NCBI GenBank assembly: GCA_051294905.1
Contig: CM119381.1
Coordinates: 23,188,001-23,252,000 of the forward strand
DNA length: 64,000 nucleotides
Reading direction: 5' to 3'
Source of the DNA: Botryllus schlosseri
Taxonomy: Eukaryota
The position numbers were made by a program, and so were the translations under genes. Within the stretch, counting starts at the first letter, position 1. Each line of letters starts with the position of its first letter. Shown piece by piece: positions 46,419 through 53,055 of this stretch. The notes beneath the pieces are model-generated. The model saw nothing but the letters and a program-made list of their open reading frames with translations, did no database searches and was not told where the DNA came from.

Positions 46419-46938
46419 CAGGGTTGCAACCAAGTCACAAGTCAATCTCACCTTTATAGTTTTGACTTGAGTCAAGTCGAGACATTTTCAATTCACCACC
46501 GAGTCAAGTCCTAGTCCAAGTCAGCGTGCAGAGGATCGAGTCCGAGTCATGGTATTATGACTCGAGTCCGAGTCCAAGTTATTGTGTTGACTGTTCAGTT
46601 TCCAGTTAAAGTCTTGTTATACACACTTTTTATAACTCTGTTTGGTGATATCGAATATAATATATAATATTATAATTCTTCCCTCTTTTAGCAGTTTCTT
46701 ATCGCATTTTCAAGTACCAGTACCAATAGACAAAATCCCAATAGTCTGGTTACTTTACTATTCTTTGAAATTACAATGAAATGTCGGTCTTGGCCGTCTG
46801 AGTCTCGAGTCGTATGACTTGGTTTGAGTCATGCGCAATGACTTGAGTCCAAGTCGAGTCGGGTATTTTGAGAAAATGACTCGAGTCAAGTCAAGTCATC
46901 AGAAATTTCGAAGACTACTTCAAGTCGTTTTTACACTT
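46419..46938. mobile_element. Inverted copy of hAT MITE family 2
   Basis: CAGGGTTGCAACC end; reverse complement similarity to 21100-21640; abuts an AGTAGAAGT-rich remnant at 46040-46418. Confidence 0.72.
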
Positions 46939-47163
46939 GCTATCTTTCATGGTATCGCAGTATTGTGGTGCATTGAAATGATAAATTGTTAGCAATAATT
47001 GGATTGAATTGAAATAAAACATTTTTAAGTCTTTCAATCACATATGAACCTCAAACTCATTTTCCATACACCCATGTGTCTTTTGTTTGTGAAATATCAT
47101 GAGCAAAATATGTCACATATGATTTTCGAACCACAGGAATTTACAGCTGTGAAAACTGCAAAG

Positions 47164-50100
47164 TGCAGACCGGATATGGCGTCTGATAACCTGCTAGAGT
47201 TGCAACCTGAGTCCCACGTAATGGGTGGCTGGGTAGATATACTTAGCTCAGGGTAGTAGGCGCACGTTCCTGCGTTAGTCCTGGATCTGACAACTTCAAC
47301 GTGAATGCAACGACAGTATTGCCTCAGATAGATATATTGGTCGAATAGGTATGGAATATACAGTAGGATATCGCGTATGAGTCTAGTTTGTAATTGAATG
47401 CACGAGCTAATAAATGGTAAGTCGCGTGGTAGCGAGAAGAAAGATATAAGTCACGTGATATACAGATATGAGAGAGAAGGGGACAAATCCCCACATCACC
47501 CCTTCCAAGGAGGCGTGATTAGCGACAATACAAAATGACATTTACTACATGAAGTGAATAGCAGTACGATTACGAAACATAGTCATTGGAACATAAACAA
47601 ATAGCGTGTGGTTGAAGGTGGTAAGGCCTAAGTATGCAGGGAATAAAGTATTGGTGGAAAGGCGATAACGTTAATTTAAAATGCGATATTGTAGCCTGAT
47701 GTTGCAATATTTATACAACATGATAGGAATGAAACCATATATGAGATAGTGTATCGAAAACACGTTAAGGGTTAGATTAAATATAGTCAAAATGGCGAAT
47801 TGGTCATCTGAGGCAATTTTTGTGTTTTATTAAAAGAACGAAAGAAGAAAATAAAATATGTACACAAAGGAATTGACATTAGGTCTCGCGAATGCGTCAT
47901 ACGCTAGAACGAGTTGGTGGTAGCTCGAAAATGAGTGTATGTTATTTGTAAAGGCAAAATCCTAGAAGCGGAATCCAGTGTATGGTTGGGAGCATATTAA
48001 AGTCAAAACTACTTTTCAAATTAATTGAAACACGTGGTATTAGAAGATAGGAAGTAACGGGAGTAGGAAACTGATGTCTGGGTTTTCTAGCGACCAGAGA
48101 CTGCTTTTATGAGTCAATGGAGGTGAAAGGAGAAAATTATTGAAAAGGTGGTCTGGTAGTCGAACCGCTTAAAATGGCGAGATTTGTGGGAAATTTCCCA
48201 AACCATTAAGATTAACGACCATTGAAATAGTCACAAAGGCCGGGGCCCGAAATTATGCGAGCCGTATATATTTTCGGCAAGAACAGTCGTATTGACGCAT
48301 TCGCTAATGGGTAGCCTATACGAATGAATTTTTAAATGCTAATAAGTCCGCATGGGAGAGATAGATAAAAGAACATGAATCATAGCCGCGTCTATAGGGA
48401 TTACGAAATTCGCCGCGTTTGAAAAGTGAACAGTCCATCAGTCTTTCGGAAGACCGAATAATTATTTATATACAGTTAAGCCATGCACCGTGGGCCGCGA
48501 ACCTGCCTGGAAGAATTAACAGTCAATGCTCATTGCTCAATAATGATTGTATTTAGATCCAGTTAGTTTGCTCCGCCAAGGTTAAAACGCGTATATCGCC
48601 TGTTCTGCGAATATTCTTCACGACTATCGAAGTCGACTTACAAATGCGTATAAATACGTGGTGTTACCAAAGTAATGTTGAACTGGTATGTCCCGAAATA
48701 TTGACATATGTGGCGGAATCGGAGAGCGGAGGAATGTCGTATAGTAGAGAGCATTTCGGCAGTTCACGAGTCCCGTTGGCAGACGACAACGAATTCTAGA
48801 ATGCAATGCAATATCGGCAGCAAAAAGGCTATTTAACAAAGTAGGAAAATAATAATAGCAAATAAAAGTAGCCTAATGACAAATTGAAAAAGAAGGTAAA
48901 TACAATAAACACATTGTAGGTCAGCGAACCGGATATGAAGTGGTGAAAATCTGCACCGATAGGGATGAAATGAGCCGAGTAGGACTACGCTATAATGTAA
49001 GCGTAAGTGCTAAGTATTGAATCGATTCCATATGTGACGGAGTGACGCAAGGCGTTTATATAAGCCTTGTGGTGAGTAATTTGAGCTTTCAAGTAGAAAT
49101 TAATAAAAAATTACGTAATCTCGAAGTGAATGGAAATTATGCCGGGTTAGCCTGGTGTATTAATTGGCTCAAAAGTATATAGAAATGGAATATTCGCATC
49201 AAAGCATGTCAAGATGAATGTAATCGTAGCGTAACGCGGGGAATTCGTCATTTAATTATATGACAAAGTAAGTCGTGAAAGTATAGTGTAAAAATTATAA
49301 AGAGAATGTAATTACAATAGCCGAAGTCATGACAAATGTGTGTATTGTTAGGTATAGCCTAATGGCATGTACGAATTTAGTGCTGCGAAAACGCAGTCAT
49401 GTCAAGAAAAGTCCCTAGCGATATGTACGCCGAACGGTATACCACAAATCCAGACATATCGCTGGATCTGCGCGCCATATGCTATCCAGATATAAAAAGG
49501 TTTCCGGAAATAAATTGACGTGTGCCGTTAAAACACGTCGCGACAGTTAATGCACAATTGCGTAAGTAAGAATCGTGCCTCACATTAAAAGTATATATAT
49601 AATATACAGTGACTGTAACGCTTTTGTAAGTACGGACTTCCTAGGTAGATCGAAGAAATGACTCAGATTGCGGTGCGAACGTCAGCATCAGATTTCGTAA
49701 TATCGCGAGACTGAGCGCTGTAGACACACGAGTTTAATTACAACACTGACCCCGTCCAACCGCTTGATCAGGGCGGAAGTTCCGGGCCAGGGTATGCAAT
49801 CCCGTGGCCGACGCTTTGAGAAGACTCGGATACTCCCGGGTCGAAATCGTGCCTTGGATCGCAACACCACCGAAACCACTCTTGATTTCCTAGGTCGGAG
49901 TAGCATATATGAATGGGAAATGTCCGTGGCCAAAATATATCACGGGATGTTTAGATAATATTGCGTCCAAATGGCATTGCGGGTAAAATAAATGTATCGT
50001 TAATCGCATGTAACTAGGTTGTAAAATCTGAGTATGTTCAGATGACATTATCGCGGGTAAGTATGTAAAGACGCAATTTACGAAGAAAAATGACAATTTG

Positions 50101-51963
50101 TCACCGTGTTAAAGAGGCCTTATTTAAGTATGGGTAATTAGAAGTAAGTGATTATGTAAAAGGCCTAGTATAAAGAAAGTAAATAAGTCAATGTTTTTAA
50201 AAAAAATGGGAAATTTATTCCGTATCCACAAATTCCAGCGTAAGGCTGAGTTTTAAGTAATGCAAATATGTGATTAAAATGAAATAACCATTATGAGAAA
50301 TTGTAGCAAAGCGAGGCTATGCGAAGACGCGTAATTAGATAAGATGAATTGAAGTTAGAAAAATAAAGTTAATTATAAAATCCCAATTCCCAGTGCTACT
50401 GGTATATCTTAATAGTTCATAGCCGAGATCGAAATTGCCGGTTAAAAAGAGCTGATATTGCCGCAGAATTATCATATTAAATACGGTGGGATGTTATGTT
50501 AAAGTCGGCTGAAAAGCCGCGTCAATATTGTTATCGAATTCACATTGACGGTATGTAATTACGGTAGTTAAAAAAAGGGTAGCGCTTAAATACGCGCGGA
50601 ACTCAATGTCGCATGAATGACAGATGAAATCACAAAAAGTAATGTATGAATTAGGTTTAAAGAAATATTATAAAATTACAATAATGGGATTGGTAGTTAT
50701 GTTCCAAGGAAATGCCGTGAATTTAATGAAACGAACAAAAAAACAGATTGGTAAATAACGACGGTGGTGGGTAGTGACGTACGCGGTAATATGAATGTAG
50801 GAAAACCGCAAAATTTGTAATAAAATCGAAATGGAGTTGCAATTAAACAATTGTAAGCAAATGGTATGTTAAACGAGTTACACGGTAGGCTAGTCGTGAC
50901 AAAGTGAAGTTAACGCGAAACAATAAATTCATATTGTTAATTTATTCGCTAAAACCTTTTCGACTAACTCTCATCAGTAGCGAACGTTAGTGATGATGGG
51001 GTGAATCAAATTTGAAATGTAAGAAATAGTTTGTCTGTATGACGTAATGATAACAAAAACAAACAACTGGTAGACGGGCTAGATACGGTAGTAATGGTAC
51101 AAAATGAACGTTAACGAGTAATTAGTAGTTAGTGAGTAATGGATCGGTAGTAATTATTCGATTTCACGGGAGAGAGAAGCAATTATATCGGGCGGTCGAG
51201 AGTGTAATTCCCGACGAGGAATGGATGTGATAATTTCGTTAGAAAGCAAAACGCTAAGATTCAAATAATAGTTTTTAAGGCCGTAATATAAAAACGAAAC
51301 CAATGAACAATGTTCTGTCAGTGTCAGAGTATCACTCAAATCTGGTTCTCTGAATGTCATGGCGACGAATATTGGAACACAAACCACGAAAATAATTATA
51401 TAGAAAGCACGAATCGAGCAATAACGAGGAAATTTGCTGCTAGCCGATAAAGCCAAGTGAGATAAATCATTCTCACTGCAAAATGCATTCCCGAAATTCG
51501 AAGTCAAGTAAACGGGTTTACCGTGTAAGTCTGGAAAAGTCCTGGATGGCTCCATAGCAGTTGTAAGTCCAATTTTGTAGGAGGCGATTCGTCCTTCGTT
51601 GAAGCTGAAATCATCTCACGAGTTGGCACCATGCAGACCGGATATGGCGTCTGATAACCTGCTAGAGTTGCAACCTGAGTCCCACGTAATGGGTGGCTGG
51701 GTAGATATACTTAGCTCAGGGTAGTAGGCGCACGTTCCTGCGTTAGTCCTGGATCTGACAACTTCAACGTGAATGCAACGACAGTATTGCCTCAGATAGA
51801 TATATTGGTCGAATAGGTATGGAATATACAGTAGGATATCGCGTATGAGTCTAGTTTGTAATTGAATGCACGAGCTAATAAATGGTAAGTCGCGTGGTAG
51901 CGAGAAGAAAGATATAAGTCACGTGATATACAGATATGAGAGAGAAGGGGACAAATCCCCACA
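47164..51963 (-). mobile_element. Non-autonomous LTR retrotransposon (LARD-like), very recent insertion
   Basis: 332-bp LTRs at 47164-47495 and 51632-51963, identical by eye, with TG...CA ends; 4-bp TSD AAAG; minus-strand PBS TGGTGCCAACTCG (51631-51619) and PPT GGAAGGGGTGA (47506-47496); no gag/pol-length ORF in 4.1 kb. Confidence 0.95.
50945..50984 (-). ncRNA. Hammerhead ribozyme-like motif inside the LTR element
   Basis: TTCGCTA-CTGATGA-GAGTTAGTC-GAA-AAGGTT-T-TAGCGAA: 7-bp perfect stem I, full core, same spacing as the PLE hammerheads in this window. Confidence 0.6.
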
Positions 51964-53055
51964 AAAGGTACAACTGCCACACTTTGCATTCAAAATACAA
52001 GAGTGAACATATTTTTTGAATTATTTTGACTTGTTTGCAAAGTGAAATCCAAAGGTGATGCTATAAAGTAATCAGCGTTAGGCTTACTACTCAAGTAGAA
52101 GCACAAGCTGTACATTTCTACTCAAGTAAAAGTACCGTAGTGACTTCTAAAGCACGTCAAAACTAGATCAAGTGGATTAAAAAAATGAAAGATGTCAAAA
52201 GTATTCAAGAAGCAAGATTTGGTCGATGGTTTGCAAACTTTTGGCAGTTAATCATTGACTTCTTTCACAATTGCAAGATGCCACTGACGCAAAATGACTA
52301 ATAACCCTATAGGTTCAAACTATGACTGCTATTTTATGCATTTCTTACAATTTCACTCATAAAGTGATCCAAACTTGGTGCATAACTACTTTCAACTTTT
52401 AAAAATAAGAAGTGTATCATATATCAGCATATCATGAAGGACAAAAATTTAGATTATAAACAAATCTTAGTTTTACAGGACATCGTTCTTCAAGGACAAA
52501 TCTTAGAAATACGGACGGTATGGTAACCCAGCCTATAGGTCAAGCTCTGCCAAAACGCTCATGTTGGTGCTGAGGTGTGATAATTAATTAGTTTCATTGT
52601 GATTAGTTACAATTGTCCAATGTAGACGGTTAATGAGCGAATCACAATATTAGCAATTAGCACATAAAGAGGACCTATATCCAATGCAAAGTTGCAAAGG
52701 CCGTTTTGGTTTTAGCCAATCTATGTAAATATAAGCCGCTGTTTCGTTAGATTAAAAACGCAAGAAAGGATACATACCTGCGATTGCCGAATAAATATAA
52801 TAGAATTTTTCAAGTACATGTACAAAGAACCAATTTAGCTGAGAATTTGCGTTAACTCCAGGGGGGATGAATGTCACGCGTCTGTTTATCATGAAAAGTT
52901 GGCCTCCATAACAGCTTGATTTATGTGTGATGTGAGCGATAAGTCAAAGGTCATATGTCGCAGCGGTTGTTTTGATTCCATCCTAAATGATTCCATTCTG
53001 TACTTCGCATTTGTTCTGGTGGCGTATTGTAAGCCTTGTATAACCCCTTTAGGAC

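What the first reader, a model, noticed from the sequence alone, without database searches (positions are those of the whole stretch)
47164..51963. Very young 4.8-kb LTR retroelement with intact cis signals but a 4.1-kb non-coding interior
Seen: 332-bp LTRs identical by eye, TG..CA ends, 4-bp TSD, PBS and PPT, but no ORF above 133 aa and no gag/RT/IN motif found. Established: LTRs are identical at insertion, and LARDs (long non-coding non-autonomous LTR elements) are described mainly in plants. Inference: the interior was already non-coding when it transposed, so this is an actively mobilised animal LARD-like RNA, probably using a Ty3/Gypsy helper. The PBS matches tRNA-His/Phe-type 3' ends for only 7 nt.
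Basis: partly seen in the sequence, partly recalled or inferred. Interest (0 to 1): 0.72.

Follow-up and report, generated by a model that had tools for sequence, protein, structure and literature searches.

The report
Young non-coding LTR retrotransposon copy
This is a very recent copy of a jumping gene that has the end repeats and start signals of a retrovirus-like element but no genes, so it must borrow another element's enzymes; such elements are already known in animals (mouse ETn), so it is ordinary.

Summary
Two 332-bp LTRs (47164-47495, 51632-51963) are 100% identical. They end in TG...CA and are flanked by a 4-bp AAAG duplication. The 4.1-kb interior has no ORF over 133 aa and no gag/RT/IN match.

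It belongs to a family with about 190 LTR cores in this roughly 495-Mb genome, which earlier notes call a sea squirt. At least 13 full-length copies share the same colinear non-coding interior. Each has its own 4-bp duplication and LTR pairs 98.2-100% identical, although lineages differ by up to 12%. So the element amplified as a non-coding RNA, supplied in trans by a helper. It fits the LARD definition and resembles mouse ETn and VL30.

New points:
- The element most likely lies on the minus strand.
- Its primer site matches no host tRNA gene beyond about 7-8 nt.
- No autonomous partner with the same LTR turned up in a partial sample.
- The "hammerhead" inside it is a 210-bp Penelope-element tail copied along in five copies.
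- LTR halves recombine between lineages.
- Head-to-tail arrays exist on two chromosomes.
- Family RNA appears in single-cell RNA-seq.

A Gypsy helper is untested. First-reader notes elsewhere in this genome appear to describe the same family. Interest is low to moderate: a new member of a known kind.

The parts
47160..47163 (.). Left copy of the 4-bp target-site duplication (AAAG)
   Evidence: Read directly from the sequence. The right copy is at 51964-51967.
47164..47495 (-). LTR, 332 bp: the 3' LTR if the element is read on the minus strand
   Evidence: 100% identical to 51632-51963. TG...CA ends. About 192 matches to its 34-nt core genome-wide, against 0 for the control pattern.
47496..47506 (-). 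Polypurine-like tract GGAAGGGGTGA on the minus strand, directly upstream of the 3' LTR
   Evidence: Other subfamilies carry different tracts at the same place that are still purine-rich.
47496..51631 (-). Non-coding interior, 4136 bp
   Evidence: No ORF over 133 aa and no Pfam hit. It is colinear at 86-98% identity with the interiors of other copies.
47826..47831 (-). AATAAA on the minus strand, kept in all 12 aligned copies: a possible internal poly(A) signal
   Evidence: RNA reads pile up just upstream of it in the minus sense, at 47782-48175, and dip just downstream. The role is inferred.
50911..51120 (-). Nested 210-bp 5'-truncated tail of a Penelope-like element, carrying a hammerhead core (CTGATGAG...GAAA) on the minus strand
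   Evidence: Present only in the five copies of this subfamily. Elsewhere it is a high-copy repeat with 893 first-look candidates, including tandem copies about 2.78 kb apart. No Rfam hammerhead match at E up to 10.
51154..51555 (-). 133-codon ORF starting 76 nt downstream of the PBS; probably not a functional gene
   Evidence: Intact in 11 of 12 copies. dN/dS is 0.5-1.35, the same range as control frames. No Pfam hit and no relatives.
51200..51613 (-). Leader next to the PBS, among the best conserved parts of the interior; inferred packaging region
   Evidence: Mean pairwise column identity is 0.92-0.97, against about 0.87 for the interior as a whole. The role is inferred.
51614..51631 (-). 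Primer-binding-site-like sequence TGGTGCCAACTCGTGAGA on the minus strand, directly after the LTR's ...TGCA
   Evidence: Conserved across subfamilies. 25 genome matches with up to 2 mismatches in a 19-mer. No matching tRNA gene.
51632..51963 (-). LTR, 332 bp: the 5' LTR if the element is read on the minus strand
51964..51967 (.). Right copy of the 4-bp target-site duplication (AAAG)

Best explanation
This is a very young copy of a multi-copy, non-autonomous LTR retrotransposon family with a long non-coding interior. It fits the LARD definition and is functionally like mouse ETn.

Likely mechanism, read on the minus strand:
- Transcription starts in the right-hand LTR.
- The RNA is packaged by the Gag of an unidentified autonomous LTR element, probably through the conserved leader next to the PBS.
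- Reverse transcription starts at the PBS (TGGTGCC...).
- Plus-strand synthesis starts at the purine tract beside the left LTR.
- The helper's integrase inserts the DNA with a 4-bp staggered cut.

Shown: the structure, the copy family, independent integrations, recent activity of several lineages, recombination between lineages, and family transcription. Inferred: the packaging role of the leader, the primer, and the identity and class of the helper.
For: - **Structure.** Identical 332-bp LTRs, TG...CA ends and an AAAG duplication.
- **No coding capacity.** No ORF over 133 aa, no Pfam hit and no protein relatives.
- **A copy family.** Thirteen full-length copies on eight chromosomes share the same colinear non-coding interior. 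Twelve of them have a clear 4-bp duplication, with eleven distinct sequences (one copy was not resolved), and LTR pairs are 98.2-100% identical.
- **Several lineages active recently.** Interiors differ by 1-12% between copies, while six copies from different lineages still have 100% identical LTR pairs.
- **Copy number and size.** There are 192 LTR-core matches against 0 for the control. Among the 100 listed places, 16 of 20 same-strand pairs lie 4.26-4.64 kb apart. The two longer pairs carry extra inserted sequence; for the 9.1-kb one this is a nested Gypsy-type element.
- **Solo LTRs** with their own duplications exist.
- **Integrase-type target preference.** T at position -3 in 9 of 11 sites, A at +3 after the duplication in 10 of 11 sites, and R-Y-R at the start of most duplications.
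- **Recombination.** Two types of U5 end and two types of U3 start occur in all four combinations, as expected from template switching between co-packaged RNAs.
- **Minus orientation.** A conserved TGG-starting sequence abuts one LTR, and variable but purine-rich tracts abut the other. RNA reads lie almost entirely in the same strand column as reads from true Penelope elements. Those Penelope reads split 27:5 and are recognised by a variant absent from the LTR copies. The Penelope hammerhead lies on the sense strand (PMC11167929).
Against: - **No helper found.** No autonomous partner sharing the LTR, PBS or leader turned up.
- **No tRNA match.** No tRNA gene ends in the PBS complement beyond about 7-8 nt, and no self-priming complementarity exists.
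- **Odd strand composition.** The proposed sense strand is pyrimidine-rich. The window's plus strand is 58% purine and 35% A, the opposite of typical retroelement sense strands. The LTR's only AATAAA is on the plus strand.
- **Strand calibration rests on an assumption.** It assumes that Penelope RNA is mostly sense.
- **This subfamily's RNA is not shown.** At 47554, all 43 plus-column reads carry the other subfamilies' base.
- **No polymorphism evidence.** No empty-site allele was seen.
Confidence: 0.85

Rival explanations
1. The element is oriented on the plus strand. The left LTR would be the 5' LTR, with a TATA-like box near 47356, a start near 47388 and AATAAA at 47409. It would use a non-canonical primer site.
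For: The plus strand is A-rich and C-poor, like typical retroelement sense strands. It holds 12 AATAAA against 3 on the minus strand, including the LTR's only AATAAA. The read pile at 47388-48175 would also fit a 5'-end-biased library. A>G changes exceed T>C on the plus strand.
Against: The sequence after the left LTR has no TGG and differs between subfamilies, so it is not a conserved primer site. The sequence before the right LTR is not purine-rich. There is no self-priming pairing. In the best-expressed subfamilies the LTR hexamer reads GATAAA, not AATAAA. Reads share their strand column with Penelope-sense reads.
Confidence: 0.12
2. It is a formerly autonomous element whose gag-pol decayed in place after insertion.
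For: None beyond the absence of ORFs.
Against: The LTRs are identical, so there has been almost no time for decay. At least 12 other copies, with different target duplications, carry the same non-coding interior in the same order. No trace of any retroelement protein domain was found.
Confidence: 0.02
3. It is a retrozyme-like element: the hammerhead motif drives self-cleavage and circular RNA formation, and this is central to its life cycle.
For: A hammerhead core lies on the same strand as the proposed transcript. Plant retrozymes also have LTRs, a 4-bp duplication, a PBS, a PPT and a non-coding interior (PMC5680766).
Against: The motif sits in a 210-bp Penelope tail nested in the interior, not in the LTRs. 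It occurs once per element and is absent from all other subfamilies, which are just as young and better expressed. There is no Rfam hammerhead match. The Penelope minimal hammerheads are described as having a minimal Helix III (PMC4209133); that they work as dimers is from my own knowledge.
Confidence: 0.03
4. The element is not fully non-coding: the 133-codon ORF just downstream of the PBS encodes a small protein needed in cis, for example a minimal Gag-like adaptor.
For: The ORF is intact in 11 of 12 copies, including lineages that differ by 7-10%, and it sits where gag would begin.
Against: dN/dS is about 1 and no different from control frames. It has no Pfam family and no relatives among 1.84 billion proteins. 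The region may instead be conserved as RNA, as the leader.
Confidence: 0.07

Closest known systems
LARD (large retrotransposon derivative; plant non-autonomous LTR elements, operationally over 4 kb with a non-coding interior)
   Same: LTRs, PBS-like and PPT-like signals, and a long interior that is non-coding yet conserved between copies. Amplification without its own proteins. Total length 4.8 kb.
   Different: Host is an animal genome (a sea squirt according to earlier notes). The LTRs are short, 332-394 bp, against several kb in the classic barley LARDs (from my own knowledge). No partner element has been identified.
Mouse ETn elements mobilised by MusD (PMC6466679)
   Same: An animal LTR element without coding capacity. 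It is transcribed, recently active, and outnumbers any coding partner. Solo LTRs are present.
   Different: ETn shares LTRs and flanking internal sequence with its coding partner MusD and belongs to class II endogenous retroviruses. It has a 6-bp duplication (from my own knowledge). Here the duplication is 4 bp, and no coding element with the same LTR core was seen in the sample examined.
TRIM (terminal-repeat retrotransposons in miniature)
   Same: Non-autonomous LTR elements that depend on a helper.
   Different: TRIMs are far smaller, well under 4 kb overall. Two short derivatives of this family (LTR cores 959 and 1446 bp apart) approach that size.
Plant retrozymes (PMC5680766)
   Same: Non-coding LTR elements with a 4-bp duplication, PBS and PPT that carry a hammerhead motif.
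   Different: Retrozymes carry the ribozyme in each LTR and give small circular RNAs. Here a single motif comes from a nested Penelope tail in one subfamily only.

Membership tests
LTR retrotransposon (order LTR, class I) | Two direct long terminal repeats with TG...CA ends | tested here: met
   332 bp, 100% identical, TGCAG...CCACA.
LTR retrotransposon (order LTR, class I) | Short target-site duplication of fixed length, differing between copies | tested here: met
   4 bp in 12 full-length copies and 2 solo LTRs, with different sequences.
LTR retrotransposon (order LTR, class I) | Primer-binding site complementary to a host tRNA 3' end, next to the 5' LTR | tested here: inconclusive
   A conserved TGG-starting sequence abuts the LTR on the minus strand. 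No tRNA-like gene ends in its complement beyond ...GGCA. A full tRNA set could not be fetched.
LTR retrotransposon (order LTR, class I) | Polypurine tract next to the 3' LTR | tested here: met
   GGAAGGGGTGA here; AGCAGGAGGCGA and ATTGGAGACGG in other subfamilies.
LARD / non-autonomous LTR element | No gag or pol coding capacity | tested here: met
LARD / non-autonomous LTR element | The same non-coding interior in many independently inserted copies | tested here: met
LARD / non-autonomous LTR element | Total length over 4 kb (operational limit against TRIM) | tested here: met
   4800 bp here; other copies are 4594-4844 bp.
LARD / non-autonomous LTR element | An autonomous partner that supplies the proteins | tested here: inconclusive
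   Among the 100 listed LTR-core places there is no recurrent longer spacing class. Further genome DNA could not be fetched.
Ty3/Gypsy-dependent element | LTR ends, PBS or leader shared with a Gypsy-type autonomous element | not tested
   There is only an indirect hint: a 4-bp duplication with alternating purine-pyrimidine bases.
Retrozyme | Hammerhead ribozyme in each LTR | tested here: not met
   No hammerhead in the LTRs. The single core motif lies in a nested Penelope tail at 50911-51120.

The most novel reading that the evidence does not exclude
This may be a non-coding LTR retroelement lineage that has persisted and diversified (up to 12% divergence, several lineages active and recombining at once) without any autonomous relative sharing its LTRs. 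Its primer site matches no host tRNA and its sense strand is pyrimidine-rich. On that reading it would parasitise an unrelated helper and use an unconventional primer, and in one subfamily it has picked up and spreads a Penelope hammerhead module.
Probability: 0.12. Interest if true: 0.5.

Novelty: new member of a known kind. Interest (0 to 1): 0.3.

Why it matters
The main use is for annotation: this is a recently active, transcribed, non-coding LTR family, with about 190 LTRs and tandem arrays, in an animal genome that earlier notes call a sea squirt. Gene-based repeat finders would miss it. It adds an invertebrate chordate example to the helper-dependent LTR elements known from plants (LARD) and mouse (ETn, VL30). 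It also shows that such an element can carry a fragment of a different retroelement class along with it. The open points, which are the helper, the primer and the odd strand composition, are modest but testable.

Tried and rejected
- **Rfam.** The whole window at gathering thresholds, and 46500-52500 at E up to 10, gave no hammerhead or other relevant family.
- **tRNA scans.** ARAGORN found none in the window or in about 300 kb of fetched loci.
- **Mis-spaced patterns.** Three early tRNA 3'-end searches used the wrong spacing and hit unrelated repeats. One recurring hit proved not to be a tRNA.
- **Correct-spacing patterns.** These show about 140 tRNA-like loci ending in ...GGCA but none ending in ...TTGGCA. 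No T-loop precedes any of the 36 genomic copies of the 12-mer.
- **Self-priming.** Earlier notes report it for other elements of this genome. It is rejected here: no exact complement of 7 nt or more, and the duplex energy lies within shuffles.
- **The 7.1-kb copy on C1.** It is not an autonomous partner: it is the same interior plus 2.3 kb of extra sequence, with no ORF of 180 aa or more inside the element.
- **The gag-protease ORF beside the C3 copy.** It belongs to a nested compact element with its own roughly 153-bp LTR and a different PBS.
- **An RT/RNase H fragment beside another copy.** It is the target the element landed in.
- **The 133-aa ORF as a gene.** Not supported.
- **Insertion polymorphism.** No read or contig bridged an empty site. 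This is not evidence that the insertion is fixed.
Full report
**Observation**

The two repeats at 47164-47495 and 51632-51963 are identical over all 332 bp. They begin TGCAG and end CCACA, and AAAG lies directly outside both ends. The interior, 47496-51631, has no ATG ORF longer than 133 aa and no stop-to-stop frame longer than 153 aa. I scanned all 63 stop-to-stop pieces of 35 aa or more, from both strands, against Pfam. None matched a capsid, protease, reverse transcriptase, RNase H or integrase family; the best E-value was 0.019 among 63 tests.

**A family, not a single oddity**

The window is C11:23188001-23252000 of a 495-Mb assembly.
- The LTR and the interior both find many copies.
- I extracted 13 full-length copies from eight chromosomes. 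All carry the same interior in the same order, at 86-98% identity to this copy. Their own LTR pairs are 98.2-100% identical.
- Twelve of them have a clear 4-bp duplication: AAAG, GTAT, ACAT (twice, in different flanks), ACGG, ATGG, CCGA, ATAC (twice), GTGG, ACGT and GTAG. One copy was not resolved.
- A 34-nt LTR core matches 192 places, against none for the control pattern.
- Among the 100 places listed, 20 same-strand pairs lie within 10 kb. Sixteen are 4.26-4.64 kb apart, two are shorter (959 and 1446 bp) and two are longer (6.8 and 9.1 kb).
- The longer two carry extra inserted sequence. For the 9.1-kb pair this is a nested Gypsy-type element.
- Solo LTRs with their own duplications also exist.

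**The interior was non-coding while the family spread**

Interiors differ by 1-12% between copies. Yet copies from different lineages each have identical or nearly identical LTR pairs. Several diverged lineages were therefore active recently, all with the same gene-less interior. Decay in place is excluded.

**Signs of retrovirus-like replication**
- Insertion sites show a weak palindromic preference: T three bases before the duplication in 9 of 11 sites, and A three bases after it in 10 of 11. Most duplications start purine-pyrimidine-purine. This is what an integrase leaves.
- The LTRs are mosaics. Two types of one end (TGCAGACC or TGTAGAAG, in window orientation) and two types of the other end (short or long form) occur in all four combinations. 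This is the expected result of template switching between two co-packaged RNAs, since the two LTR halves are copied from opposite ends of the RNA.

**Orientation**

The signals fit the minus strand only.
- Read that way, the right LTR ends ...TGCA and is followed at once by TGGTGCCAACTCGTGAGA. This sequence is conserved in nearly all copies.
- The left LTR is preceded by GGAAGGGGTGA. Other subfamilies have different but still purine-rich tracts there.
- On the plus strand the sequence after the left LTR has no TGG and varies between subfamilies. The sequence before the right LTR is not purine-rich.
- The leader next to the PBS (51200-51613) is among the best conserved parts, at 0.92-0.97.

RNA evidence points the same way. 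In a single-cell RNA-seq run, 740 reads were laid on the stretch. Within the element almost all fall in one strand column, and they concentrate at 47388-48175 plus the LTR. Reads on the nested Penelope tail fall 27:5 in the same column. They carry a base (C at 50927) that none of the five LTR-element copies has, so they come from true Penelope elements. In Penelope elements the hammerhead overlaps the start codon, so it lies on the sense strand (PMC11167929). Here that is the minus strand. So the LTR element's RNA has minus polarity, and the coverage fits a 3'-end-biased library. A conserved AATAAA on the minus strand at 47831-47826 sits just downstream, in the minus sense, of the main read pile.

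I rate the minus orientation at about 85%. Against it:
- The plus strand is 58% purine and 35% A, like a typical sense strand.
- The LTR's only AATAAA is on the plus strand.
- A>G changes exceed T>C on the plus strand.

**Primer**

About 140 tRNA-like loci above background (166 matches against 25 for the control) end in ...GGCA. That would give a 7-nt match with the added CCA.
- None ends in ...TTGGCA.
- The 12-mer complement occurs 36 times, no more often than its control, and roughly 15 of those places are element copies.
- None of these places is preceded by a T-loop.
- Self-priming, which earlier notes report for other elements in this genome, finds no support here.

**Helper**

I did not find it.
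- The window has no ORF of 200 aa or more.
- The loci I hold show only unrelated elements. One is a nested compact Gypsy-type element with its own small LTR and PBS in the C3 copy. Another is an RT/RNase H fragment that a copy landed in.
- No recurrent coding-size spacing class is attached to this LTR core among the places listed.
Five further PBS matches, including one that lies 10.3 kb from an LTR core on C5, could not be read.

A Gypsy-type helper remains a guess. The only hint is the 4-bp alternating purine-pyrimidine duplication.

**The hammerhead note**

Another first-reader note on this window called 50930-51050 a retrozyme-like chimera.
- The segment 50911-51120 is absent from all other subfamilies.
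- Genome-wide it is a high-copy repeat that also occurs in tandem every 2.78 kb, the unit size of a Penelope-like element.
- It is therefore a 5'-truncated Penelope tail that landed in an ancestor of this subfamily. It has since been copied along with the LTR element five times.
- Rfam sees no hammerhead there.
- It plays no visible part in the family's life cycle, since the subfamilies without it are as young and better expressed.

**The 133-codon ORF**

It starts 76 nt after the PBS and is intact in 11 of 12 copies. Its dN/dS is about 1, like control frames. It has no relatives among 1.84 billion representative proteins except a fragment of itself. I take its conservation to be that of the leader RNA.

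**Expression and distribution**

Family RNA is present, but diagnostic positions show that most reads come from other subfamilies. At 47554, all 43 plus-column reads carry their base. A run labelled as a different organism also holds interiors at 95-100% identity. No empty-site allele was seen, which proves nothing either way.

**Comparison with what is known**

The element meets the operational definition of a LARD. It works like mouse ETn, a gene-less LTR element mobilised by MusD (PMC6466679), and, from my own knowledge, like VL30 and MaLR. Non-coding, helper-dependent LTR elements are therefore established in animals. This is a new member of a known kind.

Earlier first-reader notes on other windows of this genome describe 4.8-kb gene-less LTR elements. 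One is exactly 4793 bp, the length of two copies I examined. They are probably the same family, so the scan has met it before.

**Limits**

All comparisons are between natural copies.

Noticed in passing
window 50911-51120 (minus strand): A 210-bp Penelope-like element tail with a hammerhead core is nested in the LTR element and shared by exactly five copies. A non-LTR-type fragment is therefore being spread by an LTR element. The window copy has private changes at 50955 and 51029 relative to the other four copies and to Penelope RNA reads.
   Followed up: yes
L063 (G000:C16:22494000-22503999), L064 (G000:C12:20396000-20405999); further units at C16:22.45-22.54 Mb and C12:20.40-20.48 Mb: There are head-to-tail arrays of the family (LTR-interior-LTR-interior) with a unit of about 4.33 kb. 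Units are 98.5-99.5% alike. They occur in blocks of opposite orientation on two chromosomes, and the C16 block lies about 100 kb from the contig end.
   Followed up: partly
insertion sites of 11 copies (L031-L061): The target preference is palindromic: T at -3 and A at +3 around the 4-bp duplication, which usually starts purine-pyrimidine-purine (ATAT, ACAT, GTAT, ATAC, ACGT).
   Followed up: partly
LTRs of 12 copies (alignment of window 47150-47540 equivalents): Two types of each LTR end occur in all four combinations, which indicates recombination between co-packaged RNAs of different lineages.
   Followed up: partly
window 47496-51631: Strand composition is odd. The strand opposite to the proposed transcript is 58% purine and 35% A. 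A>G changes outnumber T>C on it by 1.6-fold per base. I have no explanation.
   Followed up: partly
L055:3123-4622 (G000:C3:16791065-16792564): A compact Gypsy-type element is nested in a family copy. It has a roughly 153-bp LTR (TGTGG...TACA), the PBS TGGTGGAAGCGG, and a gag-protease ORF of 436 aa or more, with two zinc knuckles and a DSGA motif, that runs off the locus.
   Followed up: partly
window 46600-46993: This is a different high-copy repeat with a GACTCGAGTCGAGTC motif. It has very high depth in all runs, RNA reads on both strands, and many variable joints at 46860-46905.
   Followed up: no
G000:C2:38075529-38076521 and L057 (G000:C14:16065252-16066731): Two short derivatives of the family have LTR cores only 959 and 1446 bp apart, which is TRIM-like in size.
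   Followed up: no
G000:C5:3018835-3029185: A perfect PBS match lies 10.3 kb from a perfect LTR core on the same strand. This is either a copy with a large nested insert or a longer relative. It could not be fetched.
   Followed up: no
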